Source of the DNA: Haplodiscus bocki
Lineage: Eukaryota
NCBI GenBank assembly: GCA_965655095.1
Contig: OZ296649.1
Span: 38,192,001 to 38,256,000 of the forward strand
Direction: 5' to 3'
Length of the DNA: 64,000 nucleotides
In this document: positions 9,872 to 64,000 of the stretch, one piece after another
How the letters are laid out: the number at the start of each line of letters is the position of its first letter
Numbering within the stretch: position 1 is the first letter of the stretch
Notes under the pieces: model-generated
Database searches by the model: none
What the model was told of the DNA's origin: nothing
Seen by the model: only the letters and a program-made list of their open reading frames with translations
Position numbers and translations under genes: made by a program

Positions 9872-10223
9872 CTGAAACAAAAGTTTAGGTCGAAATAGAA
9901 GTTTTGAACTGGAAGATACGATTCTACTAAATCTGAAGCAGAGCAAATCAGACTATATTATATTAAGCATGAAACCGAGGAACGAAAGATATTACAGGAA
10001 CAACAATTTTAATCAAAAACCTGAATGACAACAATGTAACCGATTTTTGTCGGTCCCAGACGTCTGCATAAAAAGAATTCATCTTACAATGAACTGTTGA
10101 CAAAACATTTGGCAAATTATCGATCTATTCTTCGATCGATCTATTATTCGTTCTAAATCAAAAGTAGCTTTATAAATAATGAAAATGTTCGGTTGTTGAA
10201 CTCCGGAGTAACATTGGTCTAAC

Positions 10224-10416
10224 TTTTAGCGAAGTGTGTGTGTGTGGTGAGGGACCATAAACATCTATGTAGGTGGGCACTCAGATTATTCAACGACTGT
10301 AACTGAGGAGATGAAGAAGATCTGGCATCTCTCAAGTACTGCAGGGTCCTCTGCAAACTCGTAATCAACGTCACCAACCCCTTCTTCTCCCAAATCTTCT
10401 CAACAACAACCGGATC
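10224..10416 (-). CDS. ARM-repeat/TIR-like protein, coding exon 2
   Basis: Acceptor ttttgttcag|. Encodes DPVVVEKIWEKKGLVTLI...LHRCLWSLTTHTHFAK. Donor |gttaga. Phases 0/1. Confidence 0.82.
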
Positions 10417-35813: not shown

Positions 35814-38543
35814 TTATGGATGTTTACAAAAATGATCAAAAAATTCTCGTTTCACTTCAGATTTAAATTGAATGGGGTTTGTAGTTATATCCATCGACGT
35901 CTTTTCTTGAATAAAGTTTGCATATTTGCTCGCTCGGAAGAAATTTTGTTCACTCTTCTTTTTATTTGTATATGGAATATCAAAGGTAAACAAAATCGTT
36001 ACGCCGCAGAGAATATATAGAAGGTAACTTAGCTGTAATATAATCACTGACAGGAAAGTCGAAGCCACCATTAAATAATTTGTTGAACATTACAACCTCC
36101 TTGAGTTCTATGTCATGTTTAATAGGAAGCACTTTCATTATCAAGAGGCGATTTCGGTAACCAGATGCAGAAACACCCAAGCGAGAGACGCATTTTTCGA
36201 ATCTATCCAGTTCATCTAAATCGCTTTTTGACGGATACCAAGTTTCTGAGGCATAAAGAAGTAATTGTAAAATGAAAGTCTTATATAATTTTGATTTTAA
36301 GGAAATATTAAGGTGACCTGGAAGATTAAGCTTCAGCTGATGAAAGGTATTGTAACAGGTTTTTAAATTCTATGGACGTGATGAGACCAAATGAGCTTGC
36401 AGGAAACATAAAATCCTAGATCTTTAACAAATTAAGATGAAATAATTTCTTCTTCGTTAAAAAGTAGAAGTGAGTGTGGTTCTATTCCAATAACCAAAAA
36501 TTGAGTCTTAGCAGCAATAAATTGCACCAAATTTATTTTCGACCATTCAATAAAAGCTTTTAAACGAGATTGTAAGCTCGGCATGGACCTACATATCATT
36601 TTATTGTCGTCAGCATACAAGAAAAATAACGACGAGTTACATACATCTGAAAGATCCTTAATCAAGATCACAAATAATAGAGGCCCTAATATAGCATCCT
36701 GCAGCACACTGCTTGCAACTGAGGCATATTCACTGTAGACATCACCAACTTTAACACATTGATAGCGGTCAGATAGGTAAGAAGAGAAGAGTTTTAATAG
36801 TGCACCACCAATACCAAACTTCCTCAACTTATCAAGCAAACTAGAATGAGGGACTTCATCGAAAGCCCTGCTAAAATCCAAAGAGCAACAGTAAGCTGTT
36901 AGATCGTTGTCGTGTGAATGATATAGTTCATCCAAGAAAACTAGAAGTTGTAAAACGGTAGATTTGTTTTTCAGAAAGCCGTACTGCTGTCGATGAATTT
37001 TGTTGCAAACTTTTTCATAGAGAAAATCAAACAAAATGCGTTCAAAAGCAAACGACCATTTTGACAGTATACTGATAGGTCTACAGGAATTAATGAAGTT
37101 ACGTAGGCCATTCTTGTATACTAGTCTGATGTACGACTTTTTCCAGTTTGACGGGAAACATGAGGTTTCGGTTATATGAAGGAAATGTTTCAATACATGG
37201 AAACAAATGTCCGAAGCACATGAAGAGTGAAATAAACCCGGAATTCGATCCAAACCACAGCCGTCTTTTGTTTTCAACAATGCAGAATACACTGCAGAGA
37301 AAGTTATGGGAACATTGTTGAATAAGTCTTCGGAAAAGTCACCATAAACATGAGCTGGCTTCTCAAAAGATTTGACAAGGAACTCATTAAAGGCATTAGC
37401 TATAGTAATAGTACAATCAGTAAGAAGTTTATCTTCACCAAGCAAATGAAAAGATTGCGGGAGGCTATTAGATTTCAATGCCTTAAGGAGTCTAAAGCAA
37501 CCATGAAGACCACCGTTAGACTGACAAAATTGTTCCAAATATAATTCAGTAACTACTTTAATGGACTCTTCGCAATCTTTATCCAATGACAAAAGATAAA
37601 TAGATTCAGACTTTAGGAACTTTTGATATGCAGTGTTGCGAATAATCAACTGATGCATTGTATGTGAGGAATAAAATTATGGTGCGTCAATTCGCTTCTT
37701 ATGTTTAACTCTACCGAATATATCCAAATGACTATCAAAACAAAGAAGCCAATTATTGAGAAAGGAGTCATTTTTAGGCAGAAAAACAGAGAACAAAGAC
37801 TCGGATAAATATGCACCAGCTGTGCGTATCAGATGACGAGGGATAGTTGCAATGGGAGATCTGTTTTGTTTCGGAATTTTACAGGGAATTTTAAGGGTAA
37901 CGCAGCTGTGGTCAAAAAAAGGAACTTCAGTTAGATTGTAACCTCCCGGTAGTACCTCCGAAAAATTAAACCATACCAAATCAAAGATATGATTACTATT
38001 ATGGGTGGGGCGGTCTACTATTTGATGGAAATTTTGTTCTAGCAAAAAGTCAAGGAGGGAGCAAAAACTAACGTCAGCTGTGTGATACGGTTCAGCTTCA
38101 AAATCAGGTTGATTGAAATCACCCATAATAAGTGATTTCGTGCCTTCAAACCTATGGAGAAGGGATTCTGAGAACAATTTATTATCAAGTGGATTAACAC
38201 GGTAAGGACTATTTTTAGGGGGATTGTAAAAATTAACAATTAACAGAAGAAACCCCAAATTGAGTACGGCAGAACAACAAAAGTCAGTTTTGATAGATAT
38301 AGCGTTCAAAGAAATACCATTCCTTCTAATAATAGCTGTACTTCGATGACTTCCGTTTTTCCGCTCAGTAAGACTGCCAACAATATAATCGGAGGAAATT
38401 AAAAGGTTGTCTTTCAAGGAACTGTCTAACCAGGTTTCTGTTAAACAAAGCAAATCAAAATTTTGAGAATGCGCGAAGTTAATAAGAGAAAGACGTTTTG
38501 AAAAACTTGCTATATTTCTGGAATCTACCAGACCCAGTTTCAA
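35814..38543 (-). pseudogene. LINE ORF2 (APE endonuclease and reverse transcriptase)
   Basis: LCLTETWL, MGDFN, PTH...DLV, FDH; RPISILS, QYGF, LDFSRAFDEVPH, ILGPLLF, YADD. The 288-aa and 408-aa ORFs share one frame, split by a single TAA at 37677. Confidence 0.92.
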
Positions 38544-40399: not shown

Positions 40400-43300
40400 A
40401 GTTTTCTCACTTTTTATTCTTCTGTATTAGCAATGAATCAGTTTTGAAAGAATCAAAGAAAATTCCGGCAATAAGACAATATGAAAAAGTCGTCAATGGA
40501 TGTACGCGAAACCGAAATAAGAAACTTGTTGAAAATGTCTTCAAAAACTATCTAAAAGGATGCCAATAGAAAGCAACAAGCATCAACAGTCCTGGTAAAG
40601 TCCGAACTTGCAGACGAAACTTTTCATCTCAAAGTCGGATTACTGGACTAGCTGAACTAGACTCGAAACTTTTCATCGATCGACAACTTGAAAATTGGGA
40701 AAAGGTTGGAGAAGTAGTTTAAGATTCGAATTGCAATGGGATTGTCTCTGGAACCCAGCGCCTTTGTAAGTTTGAAAAAGACAAAAGAGAAAATGAAGTA
40801 TACTTGTAATGTTTGTACCTGTCTGGGACGTCCGAAAAAGCATCGCCAAAAACAATTGAAAAGAAAATCCTTTCTCACCAAAAACGTTCCCCTTTCCGCA
40901 GACTTGTCGCCATTGGATTTTTTTCCGGAGAACCATTGCTTGCAAAGAGCCATGAAACAACAAGAAAAGTGCAAAAACGCAGCCGTTTGCTTATAAAAAA
41001 TCTAAAACTCTACCGAGTCAAGGAACTTGTGGAAATGAATTGACTAGAGCATTCTGAAAGTTTTTACAGTATCTATGTTTTGGAGTTTAGTATTTTTCTA
41101 TCTCTTGGAAAAAAACTGCACCTTTCCTGTATCCTTCAATCAAGACGACCGAATGTTCGCTTCCTAACCGAAACTTGGTGACAAGAAGCCTTTCCGGATA
41201 ACACATTCTTTACAGTGGCCTATTCAATTGTAGCCAGAGCTGAGCAGGGAAGTAATCAGAGCGGAGGAGTGGCTTTTTGAGTAAAAAAACGGTAATGCAG
41301 CTAATAAATTAGAAAAGTTCGAGTGTACAATTTGCTGCGGAAACTCTCTCCAGATCAATGGTTCTATTGTATTGTAAAACCATCCGCATACAAATTGAAA
41401 ATCGTGTTTCAGACAATTTTATGCCCAGCTGCTTATCTTCCTTCTGGGCAGTAATTGGGGAACAGTCAACTCAAATTTTGTTTCTCATGGGTGATTTCGG
41501 TCTACCAGAAAAACACTAGGCTACTTTTCTTGCCATTAGTCAACTAGTTACTGAATCAACTCATAATAATCGAACGGATTGAAACCTATTTTCACCAATT
41601 GTGATGATCTTGAAGTCTTATGTTTTGAAAAGGATCCATCTTTTTCCGACCGTTTTAGTATACTTTGGGCATCTTCAGATTTTCCTCAACTTGTGTGTTT
41701 CCTCCCAATGCAGAATTTAGAGTCTGTCAGCTTCTGACATACTTTCAATGGATATCCAATTATCTACATCACTTTTCTCGTTTAATCTGCTACAGGTTTC
41801 TGACAACCTCGTTGATGATTGGCTAAAAAAATATGAGACCATTAATAGCACGTTGTTGAATGGGAAGCGGAAACGGAGGTTGTTGCTTCGGAGCTATCTG
41901 AATTTTCACAGTATCCATCTCTTTGATTGTCTCGCAACAGAATTGAAACGTCTCAACAGCTTCGAACTAACAGTTTTTCTGATTGACAAGAACTTGTGCA
42001 TGGAATTGCAGAGCTGCATCGAACTTGACATAATTGTTTACAGTGAAATTTTTAGTAGCAACAAATTGGATGTGAACGACTGCTATTAAATGCTGAGCAA
42101 CTTGAAGAAAGCTGACGTTTCTGTAAATTGGTTAACACTAAAAAGTGAAAAATAAGTGGATGCCATGCTATTGCAAAAGGCTTCAACAAGTTTTTGGTTG
42201 CAGTCTTCAATATTTTTGAAAACTATTTCGATGATTTCAGAGATAACGAATTGAATGAAATTGAAATCTCGATTAAAATAATAAAAGATGCTCTGAATCC
42301 ATTAAGTGAAAAATGGGACCCTAATTTTGCACCTGGTCAAGATATACGAAAATGTTCTAACAGTTTTTCCATCCACTTCAAAGACTTAGTTTTGTTCTTA
42401 AATCTGATTTTTTTCCGTCTTCATGGAAGCAAACTAATATTACTACTATTCCCAAGGATGGTCGGAATGCTGACACTGGAACCCAGCGCCTTTGTAAATT
42501 TGAAAAAGACAAAAGAGAAAATGAAGTATACTTGCAATGTTTGTACCTGTCTGGGACGTCCGAAAAAGCATCGCCAAAAACAATTGAAAAGAAAATCCTT
42601 TCTCACCAAAAACGTTCCCCTTTCCGCAGACTTGTCGCCATTGGATTTTTTTCCGGAGAACCATTGCTTGCAAAGAGCCATGAAACAACAAGAAAAGTGC
42701 AAAAACGCAGCCATTTGCTTATAAAAAATCTAAAACTCTACCGAGTCAAGGAACTTGTGGAAATGAATTGACTAGAGCATTCTGAAAGTTTTTACAGTAT
42801 CTATGTTTTGGAGTTTAGTATTTTTCTATCTCTTGGAAAAAAACTGCACCTTTCCTGTATCCTTCAATCAAGACGACCGAATGTTCGCTTCCTAACCGAA
42901 ACTTGGTGACAAGAAGCCTTTCCGGATAACACATTCTTTACAGTGGCCTATTCAATTGTAGCCAGAGCTGAGCAGGGAAGTAATCAGAGCGGAGGAGTGG
43001 CTTTTTGAGTAAAAAAACGGTAATGCAGCTAATAAATTAGAAAAGTTCGAGTGTACAATTTGCTGCGGAAACTCTCTCCAGATCAATGGTTCTATTGTAT
43101 TGTAAAACCATCCGCATACAAATTGAAAATCGTGTTTCAGACAATTTTATGCCCAGCTGCTTATCTTCCTTCTGGGCAGTAATTGGGGAACAGTCAACTC
43201 AAATTTTGTTTCTCATGGGTGATTTCGGTCTACCAGAAAAACACTAGGCTACTTTTCTTGCCATTAGTCAACTAGTTACTGAATCAACTCATAATAATCG

Positions 43301-46300
43301 AACGGATTGAAACCTATTTTCACCAATTGTGATGATCTTGAAGTCTTATGTTTTGAAAAGGATCCATCTTTTTCCGACCGTTTTAGTATACTTTGGGCAT
43401 CTTCAGATTTTCCTCAACTTGTGTGTTTCCTCCCAATGCAGAATTTAGAGTCTGTCAGCTTCTGACATACTTTCAATGGATATCCAATTATCTACATCAC
43501 TTTTCTCGTTTAATCTGCTACAGGTTTCTGACAACCTCGTTGATGATTGGCTAAAAAAATATGAGACCATTAATAGCACGTTGTTGAATGGGAAGCGGAA
43601 ACGGAGGTTGTTGCTTCGGAGCTATCTGAATTTTCACAGTATCCATCTCTTTGATTGTCTCGCAACAGAATTGAAACGTCTCAACAGCTTCGAACTAACA
43701 GTTTTTCTGATTGACAAGAACTTGTGCATGGAATTGCAGAGCTGCATCGAACTTGACATAATTGTTTACAGTGAAATTTTTAGTAGCAACAAATTGGATG
43801 TGAACGACTGCTATTAAATGCTGAGCAACTTGAAGAAAGCTGACGTTTCTGTAAATTGGTTAACACTAAAAAGTGAAAAATAAGTGGATGCCATGCTATT
43901 GCAAAAGGCTTCAACAAGTTTTTGGTTGCAGTCTTCAATATTTTTGAAAACTATTTCGATGATTTCAGAGATAACGAATTGAATGAAATTGAAATCTCGA
44001 TTAAAATAATAAAAGATGCTCTGAATCCATTAAGTGAAAAATGGGACCCTAATTTTGCACCTGGTCAAGATATACGAAAATGTTCTAACAGTTTTTCCAT
44101 CCACTTCAAAGACTTAGTTTTGTTCTTAAATCTGATTTTTTTCCGTCTTCATGGAAGCAAACTAATATTACTACTATTCCCAAGGATAGTCGGAATGCTG
44201 ACACTGGAACCCAGGGCCTTTGTAAATTTGAAAAAGACAAAAGAGAAAATGAAGTATACTTGTAATGTTTGTACCTGTCTGGGACGTCCGAAAAAGCATC
44301 GCCAAAAACAATTGAAAAGAAAATCCTTTCTCACCAAAAACGTTCCCCTTTCCGCAGACTTGTCGCCATTGGATTTTTTTCCGGAGAACCATTGCTTGCA
44401 AAGAGCCATGAAACAACAAGAAAAGTGCAAAAACGCAGCCGTTTGCTTATAAAAAATCTAAAACTCTACCGAGTCAAGGAACTTGTGGAAATGAATTGAC
44501 TAGAGCATTCTGAAAGTTTTTACAGTATCTATGTTTTGGAGTTTAGTATTTTTCTATCTCTTGGAAAAAAACTGCACCTTTCCTGTATCCTTCAATCAAG
44601 ACGACCGAATGTTCGCTTCCTAACCGAAACTTGGTGACAAGAAGCCTTTCCGGATAACACATTCTTTACAGTGGCCTATTCAATTGTAGCCAGAGCTGAG
44701 CAGGGAAGTAATCAGAGCGGAGGAGTGGCTTTTTGAGTAAAAAAACGGTAATGCAGCTAATAAATTAGAAAAGTTCGAGTGTACAATTTGCTGCGGAAAC
44801 TCTCTCCAGATCAATGGTTCTATTGTATTGTAAAACCATCCGCATACAAATTGAAAATCGTGTTTCAGACAATTTTATGCCCAGCTGCTTATCTTCCTTC
44901 TGGGCAGTAATTGGGGAACAGTCAACTCAAATTTTGTTTCTCATGGGTGATTTCGGTCTACCAGAAAAACACTAGGCTACTTTTCTTGCCATTAGTCAAC
45001 TAGTTACTGAATCAACTCATAATAATCGAACGGATTGAAACCTATTTTCACCAATTGTGATGATCTTGAAGTCTTATGTTTTGAAAAGGATCCATCTTTT
45101 TCCGACCGTTTTAGTATACTTTGGGCATCTTCAGATTTTCCTCAACTTGTGTGTTTCCTCCCAATGCAGAATTTAGAGTCTGTCAGCTTCTGACATACTT
45201 TCAATGGATATCCAATTATCTACATCACTTTTCTCGTTTAATCTGCTACAGGTTTCTGACAACCTCGTTGATGATTGGCTAAAAAAATATGAGACCATTA
45301 ATAGCACGTTGTTGAATGGGAAGCGGAAACGGAGGTTGTTGCTTCGGAGCTATCTGAATTTTCACAGTATCCATCTCTTTGATTGTCTCGCAACAGAATT
45401 GAAACGTCTCAACAGCTTCGAACTAACAGTTTTTCTGATTGACAAGAACTTGTGCATGGAATTGCAGAGCTGCATCGAACTTGACATAATTGTTTACAGT
45501 GAAATTTTTAGTAGCAACAAATTGGATGTGAACGACTGCTATTAAATGCTGAGCAACTTGAAGAAAGCTGACGTTTCTGTAAATTGGTTAACACTAAAAA
45601 GTGAAAAATAAGTGGATGCCATGCTATTGCAAAAGGCTTCAACAAGTTTTTGGTTGCAGTCTTCAATATTTTTGAAAACTATTTCGATGATTTCAGAGAT
45701 AACGAATTGAATGAAATTGAAATCTCGATTAAAATAATAAAAGATGCTCTGAATCCATTAAGTGAAAAATGGGACCCTAATTTTGCACCTGGTCAAGATA
45801 TACGAAAATGTTCTAACAGTTTTTCCATCCACTTCAAAGACTTAGTTTTGTTCTTAAATCTGATTTTTTTCCGTCTTCATGGAAGCAAACTAATATTACT
45901 ACTATTCCCAAGGATGGTCGGAATGCTGACACTGGAACCCAGCGCCTTTGTAAATTTGAAAAAGACAAAAGAGAAAATGAAGTATACTTGCAATGTTTGT
46001 ACCTGTCTGGGACGTCCGAAAAAGCATCGCCAAAAACAATTGAAAAGAAAATCCTTTCTCACCAAAAACGTTCCCCTTTCCGCAGACTTGTCGCCATTGG
46101 ATTTTTTTCCGGAGAACCATTGCTTGCAAAGAGCCATGAAACAACAAGAAAAGTGCAAAAACGCAGCCGTTTGCTTATAAAAAATCTAAAACTCTACCGA
46201 GTCAAGGAACTTGTGGAAATGAATTGACTAGAGCATTCTGAAAGTTTTTACAGTATCTATGTTTTGGAGTTTAGTATTTTTCTATCTCTTGGAAAAAAAC

Positions 46301-57874: not shown

Positions 57875-59500
57875 AAGAGAGACAGAGAGGGAGAGAGAGA
57901 CAGAGAGAAGAGAACAAAAGCTTTCCAAATCGATCAAAGTGAAAGATGTAGATTAAAAACTTGAATGAGTCAATGAAAACGACTTGCACCTTTTGAAAAA
58001 AGACTTTTCGAGAAAAACAAAAAAATTTAACGTCCTTTCACCAAAAAAAACATTTACCGGATGAGGTGTGTTTTCAGTACAAAATAAAAGACTATAGAAA
58101 AACCACAAGGAGACAGCCAACACTGAAAAAAAGCACACAGTTTTCTAGGTTAAAAAAAATAACATAGAACTGGTCGCACAGGTGGGCAAACCATAATGTG
58201 CCGTAAAATAGTTAAAGAAGAAGTCTTTAGTTTTCTGTAGAGGGCTGACCAAAACGATGCCTGTGGACAAGACAAAAGTGGCAATTTCTCATTGAGAAAC
58301 TTGGCTCCACTATCCAAGTCGTTTATATTAGTTTTTCGGACCGGCATTGTTAAAAGTTCTTATCCGGACAACTGGACGCTAAGCGACGTCTCACCGGTTC
58401 AAGAACAAAACGAAAGTGCGATTATCTGCCATCATAGATCCATCAGTCTTTTTCCAAAAATTTCTGAAATTTTTAAGCGGGTCCACTTCGACAACCGGCA
58501 GACAATAATTTAGAGGAACAGCCTCGTTTTGCCTTGACTGGCTTTAAGCCAATTGGATCTGTTTTTTACAGATGCGCTGCTTGCCAAATGAAATTTCTGA
58601 ACAGCTTGACAAAAAGAAAAATTCCGAATTGACGATTTTGTACACCGATTTTGAAAAAAAACTTTTGACAAAACGCCACTAAAAATATTGCGGACAAACT
58701 GGATCATATGGCGTTTTGGGTGTTGATGCGAAAGGTAATAGTTCCCATCTACTTACCCAACTAGACAGAAAAAAGCTCGGCCGATAGTTTAGACAGATCC
58801 TAGTCAACTCCTGATACAAGTAGAAATCCTTAGTGCTCAATCTTGGGTTTTCATGTTTTCGTTCGATAAGTGAACGACCTGCCTGAAGTGAGTCAAATGG
58901 ATGTGCCCCGGCTAGGCTGAATACATTGATTTTTCTATATTTAACTTCAGAATAGCAGAAAGTCAACTAATCAGCGTTCACGACGGGAGCGACGAATGTC
59001 GAAGAAAACCCAGTATTAAAAGGTTCTGTTTTCTACAAATGAAGGGAGATCTGAACGTCCAGGCAAGCAGAGTAAACATCTTTTTTCAAAAGAACTTCTG
59101 AGTCATTTCTCGAAAAACTTCCACGGTCTCAAAATGTGTAACATCCAGGAGAGGAAGCCCGGAGAGCAATCTACTTCAAAAAAGAGATTATATTGCCAAT
59201 CTCGAACATAGGAACAAAACTAAATGCGTACATGGTAAAGGTGGCTCCTGTGATTGGGTAGGCATCGCAGGGGTGGTGTCCATCGAACATGGATCTCGAA
59301 TTCATTGAACGTGAACATTTGGGCGCTACTAGGGGAACCATTGTTGTCCGGCCTGGACAACAGAGAACAACTCAGCGCTTCTCAAATGGGGCTCCTGTCG
59401 CTGTACCTTGAGCCCCATGATGTCTTGTTTCTCCGATAAGTGCAAAAAACAAAGTATTCTGTTGAAAAACAAGTCTCTTGCCAACAATGAAATTGCCTGC
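56150..59500 (+). mobile_element. Decayed CR1-group LINE (ORF1, APE, RT), 3' end displaced to 61105-61560
   Basis: VRRLGQYE (ORF1); YDIHCL..W and HGGVFL (APE); WYQCIGKLLDPQTPK linker; YPDNW..V.P...RSISLFPKISEIF and FDKTP (RT). Confidence 0.75.
57829..57912. repeat. (GA)n microsatellite, ~22 perfect units plus degenerate tail
   Basis: Directly visible; lies inside the LINE ORF2 linker. Confidence 0.97.
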
Positions 59501-59888
59501 TGTGAGGATTTGTTTCTGCCCCTGGGATGGGGGAAGAAAACTCCACTTCAGGCCCAGGATCGTCTGAGGGACGATCCTGATTGGTTCCCTGGTTTTCTAG
59601 ATTGTTGCTCCTAGAGACTCCTGGGGCAACTACGGAGCAAGTCCGAACTTGTGGGTTCAAGAGAAACTCGTCAAGTTTCGACAAGGCTCCCAAGATCCGT
59701 GATTCTGTTTTACTGAATTCTTTTGAGAGTTTTTTAGTAACTCTACCCTCAATCTCTTCGGAGACTTGAGAGATGTAATCCTGAGTTAATTCTGGGTCTA
59801 GAATGTTCGGTGCTCTCCCGCTTCTAGTACTTTCGGGTGTTTCTCTTGAAACTGCTGCTAACTTTCTTTTATTTCTCAATGTTGCCAT
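59501..59888 (-). pseudogene. Truncated gag-like ORF (MATLRNKRKLAAV...)
   Basis: DYISQVSEEIEGRVTKKLSKEFS.TE.RILGAL..LDEFL.NP is conserved with the ORF at 63678. Beyond ~59501 the ORF reads into antisense LINE sequence. The gag assignment is by position and recall of the family. Confidence 0.65.
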
Positions 59889-60052
59889 TTCGCTTGGGGA
59901 AAACCTTTTCAGCGGTCAAGACTGAATTTTCTATTTGTATGGTTAGTCAGATTATTATCCTCTTTTAATATGAGGGAGAAGTCTTTTCAATCCAATAGTC
60001 AAAGGTTAATAAATGTACAGTACGGTAAGGCGACAATTTAAATAATAATAAT

Positions 60053-61104
60053 TGTACTTTCATTTCTCCTATTTATACCTTTCCTTGGCGGGAAACATAA
60101 TTGTTTACACGCCAGATCAAGGTACAAATAGGGAAAAGTACTTTAATCATATTATATATCAAAGAAAAGATGCCGACTCTGGCGGGAAATAAACACCCTT
60201 CCATCCATTTCTTCCCTCACGGACCGCGTCCTTTCCATCTTTCAACAGAAAAGAGTACGGTCCGATCCGTCGGAAATGGACATCAAAGTGGTTATTCCCG
60301 CGCCGACACATAAATATTGTAATAAAGTAAAGATCAAAGCAATTTCCATAATTGGAGAATACTTAAAAATGCACTTGAAAATAAATGGAAATGTATGAAA
60401 TAAATATGTAGTAATACTGAAAATTTTCATGGTTACATGTTGCATCGGTTAAATTCATTTTCTGGGACAAACTAGGCGTAAATCCTAGCCCGTTCCATGT
60501 TTCTACTAGGCTACGGCTCACCTTGGCCGTGGTGGCACGTGGCGGCTACGTGCCGCTTGTAGCACTGCCTTCCGCAGTACTACTAAGGAGAAATGAATCC
60601 GGTGGCACGTAGACGACACGTGGCCGACCAAAGTTGCGCAGCCTAATAGCACATCTGATTGGTTAAGAATTCTAGTGACGTCACCAGATTAGTTACGACG
60701 GAACACATACGGAACAAATATTCACTTTTAAAGTCAAGCTCTAAAGTCAAGCTATTAAAACTTTCACAAACTTGAAGCTGTCAATCTAAATAGATTACAT
60801 ACTGCACTAGTCAATTTAGAAAGGTGGATTTATATAATAATAAATTTGATTAATTATATAAAATAGCACCTAATATAAATATAAAATACAATGAATATTC
60901 ATTTGCTCCGTATCTATTCCGTCCCAATAAGGATCAGTTCACCAGAATTCCACGTACAGGGTACGTGCTCTTTTCATGAATGGGATAGCGTTAGGTGGCA
61001 CGTAGTTGCTACGTGCCATCCACGTATACCATTCATGTTATTATGCACTAGTGGGGGTACGTAGTGTCTACGTACCCATATATATACATACGGTTAAAAA
61101 TACA
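60053..61104 (-). repeat. Putative 5' LTR (1052 bp), TGTA...TACA
   Basis: Homology with 63029-63517 starts at TGTATTTTT and ends at GAAATGAAA.TACA. Confidence 0.7.
60086..60304 (-). promoter_or_regulatory. Three E2F-type sites in LTR copy 1
   Basis: TGGCGGGAAA at 60086 and 60180; TTCCCGCGCC at 60295. All three are conserved in copy 2. Confidence 0.5.
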
Positions 61105-61560
61105 TTATTTATGAAGGAAAGTCATTAGTTTAAAAGTATATACGATCTCTTCAGAATCCTAGATTCTGTTTGATGGGCCTGGGGTGTCCTTTGCTGCTGG
61201 GATTATCTGCCCGCAGGCTTCGCAGGTGTGCTGCGACACCTGCAGATCTTGACATCCAGACAAGGAAACAATTTTCAAGTCCTACACACGCCACCCAAGA
61301 ACTCAGAAGAAACTTTCCGGATCACTTTGAAAAAACCGTTAAAAATCATCACAACAGTCGTTATACAAGAAAGCATAACTGAGAAAAATAGGTCTAATTC
61401 GTACAAAAACTTCCTATTGGATTGCTACAACGACATGGAAGCCGCAGTTGTGGAAGTTGCAATTCTCAAAAAAACTCGTGCTTTTGAAAACTAGATGGCT
61501 GAACAACAAATGAACAAATGCTGAAAGGATTTTTTAACTTTTACTTTAGTACATAAAAAT
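61105..61560 (+). mobile_element. 3' end of the LINE interrupted at 59500
   Basis: YD...ETFRITLKK...YKNFLL..Y traces typical of a CR1 ORF2 C-terminus. Confidence 0.5.
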
Positions 61561-61749
61561 CAATCGAGCCCCTCTTGCGGTAAACTTTTGTTCAAGGTTT
61601 GTAATTGTTGTACGATTTTTAAACAGATTTATTACTAGTTGCAACTTTACGCACAGTTAGGTATCTGATCTGCATGATATGTGGCCGCTGTGTACCAGCT
61701 CTTTACTTGGATAGTCATATCATTCTGAGAATTATGGAGTGAAAGTACG

Positions 61750-63028
61750 GATTTGGCACAAAGTCGTTGTATTGCACAGGATCCCCAGTCAATGTCGATG
61801 AATGCTGCTAAATTATTCAGGTGCTGTTAATTATTTCGTTTTTGTTGTTGTGGAAGTGTTATCAGAGGTGTTTTAACAACCGCTCTCTTTAATGGTAGTT
61901 TAATGGTAGCCTTTTAACAAGCACACAAGTTCTGTTCACAAAACTTGGCATTCTGGACACGCCTCGGTCAAATTCGGTTACGTTACTCCCTCTCGATAAG
62001 CGCAAATCTTTCTTCGGACAAACAAACTTGCAACATCAAAGCTGAATTGACCTTTTAATCATTTGGATAGAAATGAAGGATCTTGCAGTTGCATATACAG
62101 TGATAGTGGAAGTAGATGACTGGATATATGGAACCGTACCTATTCACTTTGTAGTTGCCTTTGACCCAAAACACACATTTCTTCTGCACGTCCTCAATAT
62201 TTTCAAGGGTTCGCCACTTTTGCATATGAACAACTGCAACCTGATAACCAGACAGGTAAGACATTTGTATAACACCAACTTACCTTAGTTTGAGATGCGA
62301 GGTGAACTTCGACTGAGCTTGATAAGCTTTGATAAGCTTGAAGTACAAAGGCTTTACTTGATGCCTTTTCAATGTGCTTTTCCCATCTCAAATCTTCTTA
62401 TACGAGGACTCGGAGAGCAATTTTGCTGATCTCTTTTCAATAGCCTTTTCCTGAATTTAGCATTTATTTGGAGAATTGATCATTGAAAGGTGAGAAAAAT
62501 TTGCAACACTCAGTGATAGCATGTGTGAGTCAGTCCATCTTTTAACGGGAGCAAGGTTGAGTTGAACTTGAAGTCATGTCTTGGTCATTGAGATGAACTT
62601 TGCACCGTCTGCATACACCATACACTTTACACTGGTCTGGTCAGGCGTTGATGAAGACTAAGGGCAAAAAAACTTGGAACTTCGAGTTCTTCTGTATGTC
62701 GCAGGAAATATTTTCGGAAAAAAACAACTAATTCTTAGCCGCTCGGTATTTTGCGGAACGTAAGACATCAATAAATTGAAAATTTCGGCTGGAACTCTGA
62801 GCCTTTAAAAAGTTTTACAAGAACTACCTCGTGGGGTACCTTGTCAAAGGTTTTTTTTCGTTGTTTTGTAAAAAATGTGGATGATCTCTTTCAAGTTCAT
62901 AGCTTCATATGTCGCAGCACACCTGCGAGGCACGCGGCCAGCCCCTACCAACTAAAAAGACACCCTAACACTCAGGAAAGAATCAAACATTACAAACTTT
63001 TAATCAAACTCCAAATGTTATCATAGCA
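61750..63028 (-). mobile_element. Decayed LINE RT and 3' fragment
   Basis: DKVPH (~62845), YADGAKF (~62615), RWEKHIEK and LENI..VQKK...WV. Confidence 0.7.
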
Positions 63029-63517
63029 CGTATTTTTGACTGTTGTGCACATATACGGATACGTATATAATACGTATCCCTAACAATGCACATATAAATG
63101 GGTATGTATTTATACGGAATCGAACTGATCCGGACTAGGACGGACCGTTACTGAACAAACAGGTATTCATAGAGTATTATTTTATTTTATTTTTTTTACT
63201 AAGGAAATATTTTACCCTTTTCCATCTAGGGAATATCCCCTTTTAAGACTCTAAACAAAACGTCGGCGCGGGAATAAACACTTTGATGTCCATCTCTGAC
63301 GGATTAGGACCGTCCATTTTCTGTCGAAAGATGGAAAAGGCGCGTCCTATGAGGGAAGAGATGGCTGAAAGATTTGTTTATTTCCCGCCAGAGTCGGCAT
63401 TTTTTACTTTGATGTTTTATTTTATAAAGTATTTTTTCCTATTTGTACCTTGACTTGGTGTGTAAACAATTATGTTTCCCGCCAGGAAAAGGCATTTATA
63501 GGAGAAATGAAACTACA
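63029..63517 (+). repeat. Putative 5' LTR (489 bp) of LTR-type element copy 2
   Basis: (C/T)GTATTTTT...TACA, with strong similarity to the reverse complement of 60053-60310 and 60890-61104. E2F-type sites at 63265, 63381 and 63475. Confidence 0.7.
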
Positions 63518-63677
63518 AAAGAGAGAAGTGTTGTTATTATTTTTGAGTACTGACGATAATATCCAGTATTGTTAATTCCCTTCGTTGTATTATTGGAAAC
63601 TTGAAAAACCCGAATTGATTTTCCTTCAGCAAAAATATTCAAGTATTAGCAACGGATCATTACTTTTCCCGTAGAAA

Positions 63678-64000
63678 ATGGCAACTCGAAACAAGAGAAA
63701 ATTGGCAGCATTAAATAAGAAAAACTGTGAGGAACATCCTAGGAGCAACTTGGCACAAAACTCGAATGTTCCCAGATCGAAGGAAGACTACATAACTCAA
63801 GTTTCTGAGGAAATTGAGGGAAGAGTCACTAAAAGGTTGTCGAAAGAGTTTAGCAGAACGGAAAACCACATACTAGGCGCATTAGCACGTCTTGATGACT
63901 TCCTCATGAACCCGCTAATTCAGGGCCACTCCGGAACCGCTCCGGAGACGTCCCGGAACGTATTTCGTACTAGCCAGGGAACGAATGAAGACGACTCCCA
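63678..64000 (+). CDS. gag-like ORF of LTR-type element copy 2, runs off the window
   Basis: MATRNKRKLAALNKKNCEEHPRS...DYITQVSEEIEGRVTKRLSKEFSRTENHILGALARLDDFLMNP, open to the window edge. Confidence 0.7.
   Translation, partial: MATRNKRKLAALNKKNCEEHPRSNLAQNSNVPRSKEDYITQVSEEIEGRVTKRLSKEFSRTENHILGALARLDDFLMNPLIQGHSGTAPETSRNVFRTSQGTNEDDS

What the first reader, a model, noticed from the sequence alone, without database searches (positions are those of the whole stretch)
60534..63079. Covarying ACGT-N7-ACGT triloop hairpin repeated in the LTRs of two diverged elements
Seen: six copies of one motif. GGCACGTGG-CGG-CTACGTGCC (60534), GGCACGTAG-ACG-ACACGTGGC (60604, imperfect), CACGTAC-AGG-GTACGTG (60951), TGGCACGTAG-TTG-CTACGTGCCA (60996), GGGTACGTAG-TGT-CTACGTACCC (61055) and GGATACGTAT-ATA-ATACGTATCC (63057). 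The two ACGT cores and their 11-bp (about one helical turn) spacing are invariant and the 3-nt loop is free. Three stem positions change in complementary pairs: the loop-closing pair is G-C, C-G or T-A; the outer pairs are C-G/T-A and G-C/A-T. Inference: a selected DNA cruciform or RNA hairpin, or a phased double bZIP/bHLH site, acting as an uncharacterised cis element of this family. Alternative: template-switch perfection of quasi-palindromes.
Basis: partly seen in the sequence, partly recalled or inferred. Interest (0 to 1): 0.72.

Follow-up and report, generated by a model that had tools for sequence, protein, structure and literature searches.

The report
Paired ACGT palindromes in retrotransposon LTRs
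The six hairpin-like repeats are real: they are copies of a strictly spaced pair of ACGT boxes that a very abundant family of jumping genes carries in the control region of its terminal repeats, most likely as docking sites for a host gene-switch protein, and their two arms are kept mirror-symmetric in a way that is unexplained but resembles palindromes known from maize retrotransposons.

Summary
Observation confirmed. All six motifs sit where stated; ACGT-N7-ACGT occurs 7 times in the window against 0.35 expected.

Context:
- Window 59501-61238 (minus strand) is a solo 1.74-kb LTR with a 5-bp target duplication. It belongs to a young 15.4-kb LTR retrotransposon.
- Position 62910 onward is the LTR of a diverged sister family.

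The motif is superfamily-wide:
- Genome count is 23,393 at N7, against about 1,000 for the control, 2,059 at N6 and 918 at N8.
- 16 of 20 sampled sites lie at the same U3 positions in LTR lineages only 45-86% identical.
- Invariant features are the two ACGT cores, a Y before and an R after each core (80 of 82 hexamers), and the spacing. The loop is free.

Arm flanks covary:
- The -1 pair is T-A 23, C-G 15, other 1. The covariation score beat all 500 shuffles.
- Orthologous stems differ by up to four compensated pairs.
- Dead copies decay without compensation (21 single hits, 0 compensated).
- Equally spaced boxes in the element's internal post-pol region are mostly not palindromic.

Best reading (about 0.5): a paired-box enhancer module read as double-stranded DNA. 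A functional hairpin or cruciform (0.22) and mutational symmetrisation (0.12) remain open. Maize Sirevirus LTR palindromes are a close published analogue. Moderate interest.

The parts
59501..61238 (-). Solo LTR (1,738 bp, TGT...ACA) of a young, high-copy 15.4-kb LTR retrotransposon. It is flanked by the 5-bp target-site duplication GCAGG (59496-59500 and 61239-61243).
   Evidence: It is 98.6% identical to both LTRs of a full copy (L031+L033), and nothing else in the window matches that element's interior. Termini and the duplication were read. At least 40 copies are 96-100% identical, in pairs 13.66 kb apart.
61055..61077 (.). Module H1: perfect 10-bp arms, 3-nt centre, two TACGTA boxes. About 162 nt from the LTR 5' end in element sense.
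   Evidence: DNA fold -9.8 kcal/mol, z -4.9. Positional homologue of the module at 63057.
60996..61018 (.). Module H2: perfect 10-bp arms, CACGTA / TACGTG boxes. A third ACGT at 61022-61025 lies in the same 11-bp phase.
   Evidence: DNA fold -11.1 kcal/mol, z -7.2. The in-phase third box is conserved in four LTRs: winL, L073, L069 and L067.
60951..60967 (.). Module H3: perfect 7-bp arms. The loop-closing pair is C-G here and T-A in five other sampled LTRs.
60604..60624 (.). Module H4: imperfect in this family. A related lineage (L073) keeps 8 paired positions.
60534..60554 (.). Module H5: 7+1 paired positions with one A.C (sense) mismatch that is conserved between two lineages.
60909..60948 (-). 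The most conserved U3 block of the superfamily, directly 3' of H3. It contains an inverted CCAAT (ATTGG).
   Evidence: Column conservation 0.89-0.94 across 15 lineages, against 0.4-0.6 in the spacers. Alignment.
60812..60864 (-). Two TATA-like elements conserved among lineages; candidate core promoter about 90-140 nt 3' of H3. A second candidate, TATAAATA, lies at 60070-60077. No RNA evidence for either.
   Evidence: Read; inference only.
60675..60684 (.). Perfect CRE-type palindrome GTGACGTCAC between H3 and H4, followed by CCAAT. In lineage L075 it is embedded in an 18-bp perfect palindrome.
62910..64000 (+). LTR of a diverged sister family. It has the same TGTCGCAGCAC terminus and runs off the window end. 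About 40 copies 86-92% identical were scored.
63057..63079 (.). Module R1: perfect 10-bp arms, two ATACGTAT boxes. It differs from its homologue H1 by two compensated pairs (-2 G-C to A-T; +2 G-C to T-A).
   Evidence: DNA fold -8.2 kcal/mol, z -4.4.
59382..59888 (-). Open frame that starts inside the LTR 3' part and reads out through the LTR end. It is homologous to the frame starting at 63680 (+) in the second LTR. Probably the start of gag.
   Evidence: No Pfam match. See Noticed in passing.

Best explanation
The motif is a cis-regulatory module of the LTR's upstream (U3) region. It consists of two six-base boxes Y-ACGT-R held exactly 5 bp apart (11 bp centre to centre, the same face of the helix). 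It is present 1-5 times per LTR through tandem duplication. The most likely reader is a host ACGT-core factor that binds double-stranded DNA as two cooperating dimers, as in paired E-box or paired ACGT half-site elements, and so drives transcription of the element.

Shown:
- the boxes, their spacing and their position are conserved across LTR lineages that are otherwise 45-86% identical;
- the module lies upstream of conserved CCAAT- and TATA-like blocks;
- equally spaced boxes recur in a second non-coding region of the element.

Also shown: in U3 the flanks of the two boxes are kept complementary by paired substitutions in replicating lineages.

Inferred: protein binding, the identity of the factor, and the reason for the symmetry. 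My reading is that the symmetry is secondary. It would arise either through hairpin-templated correction while the LTR is single-stranded during reverse transcription, or through a modest advantage of an orientation-free, possibly bidirectional, module.
For: - Count and spacing: 23,393 genome matches at N7 against 1,029 for the control, 2,059 at N6 and 918 at N8, where the control is 813. Among 15 LTR lineages the spacers between neighbouring ACGTs are N7 in 34 cases and N6 in 4, with none at N5, N8 or N9.
- Sequence constraint beyond pairing: 80 of 82 hexamers are TACGTA, CACGTA, TACGTG or CACGTG. Position -1 is never a purine although pairing would allow it.
- Spacing without palindromy: in the internal post-pol region of the same element type, 12 N7 modules are conserved across four copies 76-87% identical. 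Their boxes are often in direct orientation, and -1 is paired in only 3 of 12.
- Phasing: a third in-phase ACGT outside the H2 palindrome is conserved in four LTRs: winL, L073, L069 and L067.
- Position: the modules are more conserved (0.73-0.82) than the spacers (0.41-0.57) and sit 5' of the CCAAT-like block (0.89-0.94) and the TATA-like elements.
- One LTR carries several different flank types, so no single flank-reading protein is needed.
- Known paired-site precedents exist: ChoRE (PMC4292737) and GMEB1/2 (PMC4274154).
Against: - The model does not by itself explain why arm positions -2 to -6 covary. These lie outside a normal bZIP/bHLH footprint (H2 stems of 12 bp in L066 and L069).
- An N6 variant of H1 keeps a perfect palindrome while changing the box spacing, and it is common in successful families.
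- No RNA data exist here, so U3 is assigned from motifs only.
- No binding data of any kind.
Confidence: 0.5

Rival explanations
1. The hairpin itself is the functional unit. The U3 palindromes would act as one of three forms: snap-back DNA hairpins in single-stranded LTR intermediates of reverse transcription (for example plus-strand strong-stop DNA); cruciforms extruded in negatively supercoiled promoter DNA; or stem-loops in the 3' part of the genomic RNA. In each case the ACGT duplex in the stem is what a protein recognises.
For: - Arm covariation is real: 71.6% of cells are paired against 62.7 +/- 1.2 shuffled, and the covariation score is 0.265 against 0.148, with 0 of 500 shuffles reaching either.
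- Orthologous H2 stems differ at four positions, all compensated.
- The N6 variant of H1 stays a perfect 22-nt palindrome.
- Stems reach 12 bp, longer than a transcription-factor footprint needs, with DNA folds of -8 to -13 kcal/mol and z -4 to -7.
- The LTRs are generally rich in long perfect palindromes, 77 listed (about 45 once one TA-repeat run is discounted) against about 10 in shuffles. Some have no ACGT.
Against: - Structure alone does not explain the invariant ACGT and Y/R flanks, nor the near-absence of 4- or 5-nt centres made by insertion (N8 is at background).
- Loop-proximal mismatches persist for long times in whole clades.
- Wobble against A.C mismatches show no strand bias (about 3 against 4 independent cases), which speaks against a sense-strand RNA.
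- Internal modules keep boxes and spacing without pairing.
- There is no Rfam match.
Confidence: 0.22
2. The symmetry is a mutational by-product. Tandemly duplicated box pairs are quasi-palindromes, and they are repeatedly made perfect by intramolecular template switching of the reverse transcriptase or a polymerase. Selection acts on the boxes only, or on nothing.
For: - Quasi-palindrome template-switch mutation is an established mechanism (PMC7202029).
- Other transcription-factor-like palindromic cores in these LTRs are also embedded in unexpectedly long perfect palindromes: 18 bp around TGACGTCA in L075 and 29 bp around TTCCGGAA in L080.
- Palindromes are concentrated in the LTR, the part that passes through single-stranded strong-stop intermediates.
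Against: - Thirty old copies of the sister family show 21 single stem hits and no compensated pair, so host replication does not perfect them.
- Near-loop mismatches, and the imperfect internal modules, have stayed imperfect across lineages 76-87% identical although they are reverse-transcribed too.
- The model does not account for the conservation of position, copy and spacing.
Confidence: 0.12
3. The modules are binding sites of an element-encoded protein, namely the antisense spliced zinc-finger gene carried by these elements. They would not be sites of a host factor.
For: - The full copy carries antisense open-frame pieces totalling about 1,160 residues, with a CxxC...H...H finger.
- Earlier scan notes describe this gene as conserved (s1-376383, s1-385823; unchecked leads).
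- Modules lie both in U3 and next to the 3' end of that gene.
Against: - One LTR carries several different flank types, so flank covariation cannot be co-evolution with one protein.
- No domain hit was found for the pieces.
- There is no binding evidence, and the earlier follow-up also found none (s1-376408).
Confidence: 0.06

Closest known systems
Palindrome-rich cis-regulatory region of maize Sirevirus (Ty1/copia) LTRs (Bousios et al. 2016, PMC4728375)
   Same: Both have many copies per LTR of a short palindrome in the upstream, cis-regulatory half, 5' of the conserved promoter. In both, the arms are more conserved than the centre, and the palindromic form is kept while the sequence differs among families and among loci. 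Both reach tens of thousands of genomic copies and can form hairpins.
   Different: The host is a plant and the superfamily is different. The maize palindrome is a single 17-nt unit (CACCGGACtGTCCGGTG) with no ACGT pair. Its proposed role is as an siRNA hotspot, which could not be examined here. Here each arm contains its own self-complementary ACGT box, and the box spacing is the conserved quantity.
Carbohydrate response element, ChoRE (Mondo/ChREBP-Mlx), CACGTG-N5-CACGTG (PMC4292737)
   Same: Two ACGT-core hexamers are separated by exactly 5 bp and are read by two cooperating dimers. Some modules here are exact matches (for example the L069 module with CACGTG in both arms, and H5 with CACGTG/TACGTG).
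   Different: Only 8 of 82 hexamers are CACGTG and 39 of 82 are TACGTA, which lacks the CA..TG E-box contacts. No binding was tested.
Paired ACGT half-sites of the SAND-domain factors GMEB1/2 (parvovirus initiation factor PIF) (PMC4274154; PMC1185569 for PIF)
   Same: Recognition needs two ACGT half-sites with little flank specificity. Here 9 nt lie between the CpGs, inside the reported 4-11 nt range. The genome has a SAND-domain gene.
   Different: GMEB tolerates variable spacing, whereas here it is nearly fixed. The one SAND domain found is no closer to GMEB1 than to SP100/SP140. The primary PIF paper could not be read.
Quasi-palindrome template-switch mutagenesis (PMC7202029)
   Same: It would make imperfect inverted repeats perfect, and so produce apparent compensatory changes without selection.
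   Different: No such correction is seen in 30 decaying copies. It explains neither box identity nor spacing.

Membership tests
LTR retrotransposon LTR (solo) | TG..CA termini, short target-site duplication, identity to both LTRs of full-length copies | tested here: met
   TGT...ACA termini, a GCAGG duplication, and 98.6% identity to both LTRs of L031+L033, whose own LTRs are 99.5% alike. The interior has gag (DUF1759), a protease, the start of RT, and an integrase C-terminus.
LTR retrotransposon superfamily (BEL/Pao versus Ty3/gypsy) | Diagnostic gag/pol domains | tested here: inconclusive
   Gag matches DUF1759, which is typical of BEL/Pao. The integrase piece matches Integrase_p58_C, the Ty3 Gag-Pol chain and foamy-virus integrase. 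Earlier scan notes call it Ty3/gypsy-type. I leave the superfamily open.
ChoRE-type paired E-box | Exactly 5 bp between two hexamers | tested here: met
   N7 between ACGT cores equals N5 between hexamers. Counts are 23,393 at N7 against 2,059 at N6 and 918 at N8.
ChoRE-type paired E-box | Both hexamers are E-boxes (CAYGNG) | tested here: not met
   TACGTA 39, CACGTA 20, TACGTG 13, CACGTG 8 of 82.
ChoRE-type paired E-box | Bound by a Mondo/ChREBP-Mlx heterotetramer | not testable with these tools
   Needs EMSA, DAP-seq or ChIP.
GMEB/PIF paired ACGT site | Two ACGT half-sites, 4-11 nt between CpGs | tested here: met
   ACGT is invariant in both arms of 39 of 39 sites, with 9 nt between CpGs (range from PMC4274154).
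GMEB/PIF paired ACGT site | A GMEB-type SAND protein in the host that binds the site | tested here: inconclusive
   One SAND domain was found (93.8 bits). It is equally close to SP100/SP140 and GMEB1. Binding was not tested.
Sirevirus-type LTR palindromes | Multiple short palindromes in the upstream cis-regulatory part of the LTR; arms conserved, centre free; form kept while sequence varies | tested here: met
Sirevirus-type LTR palindromes | Belongs to the plant Sirevirus lineage and is an siRNA hotspot | tested here: not met
   The element type and the motif are different. Small-RNA data were not available. This is an analogue, not a member.
Known structured RNA family | Match to an Rfam covariance model | tested here: not met
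   Only one chance-level hit, outside the modules.
Structured hairpin under selection | Compensatory substitutions beyond the chance and phylogeny controls | tested here: inconclusive
   It beats all 500 column shuffles and all slid controls. However, the sequences are related and partly ascertained by the motif, and no phylogeny-aware test was possible.

The most novel reading that the evidence does not exclude
The U3 palindromes work as nucleic-acid structures and not only as linear sites. They would extrude as cruciforms, or snap back in single-stranded LTR intermediates, presenting one ACGT duplex per stem. They may also form the shared core of a bidirectional promoter that drives the genomic RNA in one direction and, from the 3' LTR, the element's spliced antisense zinc-finger gene in the other. 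An AT-rich TATA-like stretch abuts H1 on its antisense side in all lineages.
Probability: 0.2. Interest if true: 0.7.

Novelty: new variant of a known kind. Interest (0 to 1): 0.45.

Why it matters
If the reading is right, one strictly spaced pair of ACGT boxes has been spread to more than twenty thousand places in this genome by a still-active retrotransposon superfamily. Each copy, solo LTRs included, could then act as a ready-made regulatory site for whatever host factor reads it.

The arm covariation gives a clean experimental handle: box mutants against arm-breaking and arm-restoring mutants. That handle addresses a question left open for the maize Sirevirus palindromes as well, namely whether LTR palindromes act as sequence, as structure, or are a footprint of reverse transcription.

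Tried and rejected
- RNA evidence for the transcription start. No RNA run holds the LTR. The four runs that do behave like genomic DNA contigs, with unique flanks at about 5-70x and the LTR thousands-fold deeper, so they say nothing on transcripts.
- 'A second, unrelated retrotransposon uses the same module.' Rejected. L068, L074 and L077 turned out to be the internal post-pol region of the same element type. They still serve as a within-element control.
- Strand-specific RNA hairpin. G.T against A.C mismatches show no consistent strand, and the nine sense-strand G.T cases are one inherited state.
- Rfam scan: nothing.
- Post-insertion correction or constraint. There are 0 compensated pairs among 21 hits. 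The hairpin mismatch rate (3.8%) is only a little below the flanks (6.2%), which I attribute to subfamily structure.
- CpG decay. CpG columns do not decay faster than others, 6.3% against 6.2%.
- SAND/GMEB candidate: present but not specifically GMEB-like.
- The primary PIF paper is not held.
- My first label for the element was BEL/Pao. I withdrew it to 'unsettled' after and the earlier scan notes.
Full report
**1. Observation**

ACGT-N7-ACGT occurs 7 times in the 64-kb window, all between 60537 and 63075. A dinucleotide-preserving shuffle gives 0.35 +/- 0.64, and none of 100 shuffles reaches 7.

The seventh match (61011-61025) joins the second ACGT of H2 to a further ACGT 11 bp away. It is not a palindrome.

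Four motifs are perfect palindromes with 7-10 bp arms and a 3-nt centre: 60951, 60996, 61055 and 63057. As single-stranded DNA they fold at -6.1 to -11.1 kcal/mol, z -4.4 to -7.2. The motifs at 60604 and 60534 are imperfect and fold weakly, z -1.3 and -2.5.

**2. What the region is**

- Window 59501-61238, read on the minus strand, is a solo LTR of 1,738 bp. It has TGT...ACA termini and a 5-bp target-site duplication, GCAGG.
- It is 98.6% identical to both LTRs of a full 15.4-kb copy elsewhere (L031+L033). That copy's own LTRs are 99.5% alike. Nothing else in the window matches that copy's interior.
- The genome is 1.5 Gb and holds at least 40 copies 96-100% identical, in pairs 13.66 kb apart.
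- The full copy has gag (DUF1759), a protease, the start of RT and an integrase C-terminus. On the opposite strand it has open-frame pieces totalling about 1,160 residues, with a CxxC...H...H finger.
- I leave the superfamily (BEL/Pao or Ty3/gypsy) open, because the domain evidence points both ways.
- From 62910 on the plus strand a second LTR begins with the same TGTCGCAGCAC terminus. It belongs to an older sister family; scored copies are 86-92% identical to it.
- The two LTRs lie head to head. That is why one search reports them as a large inverted repeat.

In element sense the five modules of the solo LTR lie at LTR positions of about 162, 221, 272, 615 and 685. The single module of the second LTR lies at position 148 and aligns with H1.

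**3. The motif belongs to a whole superfamily**

Genome counts for G-NN-ACGT-Nx-ACGT-NN-C:

| Spacer | Matches | Reversed-pattern control |
|---|---|---|
| N6 | 2,059 | 800 |
| N7 | 23,393 | 1,029 |
| N8 | 918 | 813 |

N8 sits at its control, so the reversed pattern is a fair background.

I fetched 20 of the first 50 listed N7 places:
- Sixteen lie in LTRs that start with the same terminus and align to the window LTR. These LTRs are only 45-86% identical to each other over the first 360 nt.
- Three lie in the internal region of the same element type.
- One (L079) is elsewhere and was not studied.

In the LTRs the modules occupy the same three alignment positions, H1, H2 and H3. They are followed by the best-conserved block of the region, which contains an inverted CCAAT, and then by TATA-like elements.

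Column conservation over 15 lineages:

| Region | Conservation |
|---|---|
| H1 and H3 | 0.73-0.82 |
| Spacers | 0.41-0.57 |
| CCAAT-like block | 0.89-0.94 |

H1 and H2 are partly ascertained by my search pattern. H3 is not.

**4. What is fixed and what varies**

In 39 distinct sites from these LTRs, both ACGT cores are invariant.
- The base before each core is always a pyrimidine, and the base after it is a purine in nearly every case.
- As a result 80 of 82 hexamers are TACGTA (39), CACGTA (20), TACGTG (13) or CACGTG (8).
- Pairing alone would allow a purine at -1, and none occurs.
- The three central bases are free.
- Among neighbouring ACGTs in 15 lineages the spacer is N7 in 34 cases and N6 in 4. 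It is never N5, N8 or N9.

The N6 cases are informative. They are mostly H1 with one base lost from an AT-rich centre. They remain perfect even-length palindromes and are common in successful families.

**5. Arm covariation**

The test used a 14-pair stem on the 39 sites, including six that are clearly not hairpins:
- 71.6% of cells are standard pairs, against 62.7 +/- 1.2 after shuffling the 3' letters.
- Cells changed on both sides number 79, against 47.7.
- The covariation score is 0.265, against 0.148.
- Each of these three measures is reached by 0 of 500 shuffles.
- Sliding the partner by 1-3 columns gives 19-46% paired.

Pair states at individual positions:

| Position | States |
|---|---|
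| -1 | T-A 23, C-G 15, other 1 |
| -2 | A-T 16, G-C 7, C-G 4, wobble 5, other 7 |
| -4 | G-C 10, T-A 7, C-G 4 |

Orthologous comparisons make the point without statistics:
- The H2 stem of L069 (GGTGGC-ACGT...) and that of L066/L075 (GACGAT-ACGT...) differ at -1, -2, -4 and -5, and all four differences are compensated.
- H1 in the solo LTR and R1 in the second LTR differ at -2 and +2, both compensated.
- The loop-closing pair of H3 is C-G in winL, L067 and L069 and T-A in five other LTRs.

By eye I count at least ten independent paired substitutions. The tool's caveat applies: the sequences are related, so beating the shuffles is not a probability.

**6. Controls that bear on mechanism**

(a) Dead copies. 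Thirty old copies of the sister family show 21 stem pairs hit on one side and none compensated. CpG columns decay no faster than other columns. The symmetry is therefore produced or kept in replicating lineages, not after insertion.

(b) Strand. G.T (sense) against A.C (sense) mismatches number 11 against 8. Nine of the G.T cases are one inherited state, so there are about 3 against 4 independent cases. A sense-strand RNA hairpin is not favoured. Rfam finds nothing.

(c) Internal modules. Downstream of the integrase stop, the full copy and three relatives that are 76-87% identical carry 2-5 tandem units.
- Each unit has two Y-ACGT-R boxes at N7.
- The boxes are often in direct orientation (CACGTA...CACGTA, TACGTG...TACGTG).
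- Position -1 pairs in 3 of 12 and +2 in 1 of 12.
- Their folds are not better than shuffles.
- Box identity and spacing therefore persist without a hairpin.

(d) Third box. A third in-phase box flanks H2 in four LTRs: winL, L073, L069 and L067.

(e) Mixed flanks. One LTR carries several flank types at once (GGGT-, TGGC-, GAGC-, GGCC-). The covariation is therefore within each module and is not co-evolution with one flank-reading protein.

(f) General palindrome richness. The LTRs hold 77 perfect palindromes with arms of at least 7 bp, or about 45 if one TA-repeat run is discounted, against about 10 in shuffles. Examples include 18 bp around a CRE core and 29 bp around TTCCGGAA. The 12-kb interior has one.

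**7. Reading**

Items 4, 6c and 6d say that the conserved unit is a pair of ACGT-core boxes on one face of the double helix. That is how cooperating dimers read DNA.

Item 5 says that in U3 something also keeps the arms complementary out to 10-12 bp, further than such proteins contact.

I therefore commit to a paired-box enhancer module as the main function (about 0.5). I treat the symmetry as a second layer with three possible causes:
- a functional DNA hairpin or cruciform (0.22);
- symmetrisation by template switching while the LTR is single-stranded during reverse transcription (0.12);
- much less likely, an element-encoded reader (0.06).

Item 6f and the LTR-specific strong-stop intermediates make the second and third readings hard to separate on sequence alone.

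U3 is assigned from motifs only. The candidate TATA elements are at 60812-60864 and at 60070-60077, and both lie 3' of all modules in element sense.

**8. Comparison with what is known**

- The closest published analogue is the palindrome-rich cis-regulatory region of maize Sirevirus LTRs. It has a 17-nt palindrome in 86,055 copies, about 7 per LTR, upstream of the promoter. The arms are more conserved than the centre, and the form is kept while the sequence varies (PMC4728375). The present case is in a different host kingdom and element type, and it has the distinct two-box architecture.
- The spacing equals that of the ChoRE, CACGTG-N5-CACGTG, bound by two Mondo/ChREBP-Mlx heterodimers (PMC4292737). 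However, only a minority of boxes here are E-boxes.
[quoted passage not shown] Here the distance is 9 nt and nearly fixed.
- The genome has a SAND-domain gene, but it is not specifically GMEB-like.

**9. Earlier notes of this scan (unchecked leads)**

- s1-376408 describes the same Y-ACGT-R-N5-Y-ACGT-R motif in an LTR 50 Mb away and reads it as host-factor docking sites. My counts and spacing tests agree. The arm covariation and the internal non-palindromic control add to it.
- s1-376383 and s1-385823 describe the antisense spliced zinc-finger gene.
- s1-376428 describes gag starting inside the LTR. I saw the corresponding frames.

**10. Limits**

- Each lineage is represented by one or two copies, so some mismatches may be post-insertion damage.
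- There are no RNA data and no binding data.

Noticed in passing
window 59382-59888 (-) and 63680-64000 (+); L031:3687-4079 (+): An open frame starts about 390 nt before the 3' end of the LTR and is conserved at protein level between the two LTR families (shared stretch ...QVSEEIEGRVTK.LSKEFS.TE...LGAL..LD.FL.NP). In the solo LTR it reads out through the LTR end. It is probably the start of gag placed inside the LTR, so every solo LTR carries a coding piece. There is no Pfam match.
   Followed up: partly
L033:619-4994 (-), i.e. the interior of the full copy L031+L033: Five antisense open-frame pieces (235, 283, 201, 291 and 154 aa) sit between pol and the 3' LTR. One has a CxxC...H...H zinc-finger motif. 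They look like exons of an antisense accessory gene. No Pfam hits.
   Followed up: partly
L031:7251-9080 (+): The young 15.4-kb copy has no long open frame for about 1.8 kb where RT/RNase H should be. Even so, at least 20 copies with the same 13.66-kb LTR spacing and near-identical LTRs exist. It may be a non-autonomous derivative mobilised in trans.
   Followed up: no
L031+L033 joined, positions 10037-10320; L068:1320-1500; L074:1250-1530; L077:1480-1540: A tandem array of 38-nt units, each with two Y-ACGT-R boxes at N7, lies in the non-coding stretch between the pol stop and the 3' end of the antisense gene. Unit number varies from 2 to 5 among relatives.
   Followed up: yes
LTR positions of L073 (662), L075 (533, 637, 664), L071 (553), L080 (516, 590, 642): Other long perfect palindromes without paired ACGT boxes occur in these LTRs. 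They include GTAGCACTGC-ggaag-GCAGTGCTAC between H4 and H5, 18 bp around TGACGTCA, a 12-bp stem in L071, and 29 bp around TTCCGGAA.
   Followed up: no
window 42194-46180 (+): Three 176-aa open frames are spaced exactly 1,728 bp apart, which suggests a tandem repeat of a coding unit.
   Followed up: no
window 36432-38543 (-): Two adjacent open frames of 408 and 288 aa on the minus strand; not examined.
   Followed up: no
G000:C5:68127116-68127328 (L085): The only SAND-domain match scored in the genome (93.8 bits) lies in an open frame reported as 865 aa without stops. It is equally close to SP100/SP140 and GMEB1 SAND domains.
   Followed up: partly
R-family copies L035-L064: CpG columns in 30 old LTR copies are no more mutated than other columns (6.3% against 6.2%). 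This suggests that these copies are not subject to methylation-driven CpG decay.
   Followed up: no
L079:1440-1500: One sampled N7 site lies outside the LTR superfamily, in a stretch with TTACGTAA-like and TGACGTCA motifs. The context is unknown.
   Followed up: no
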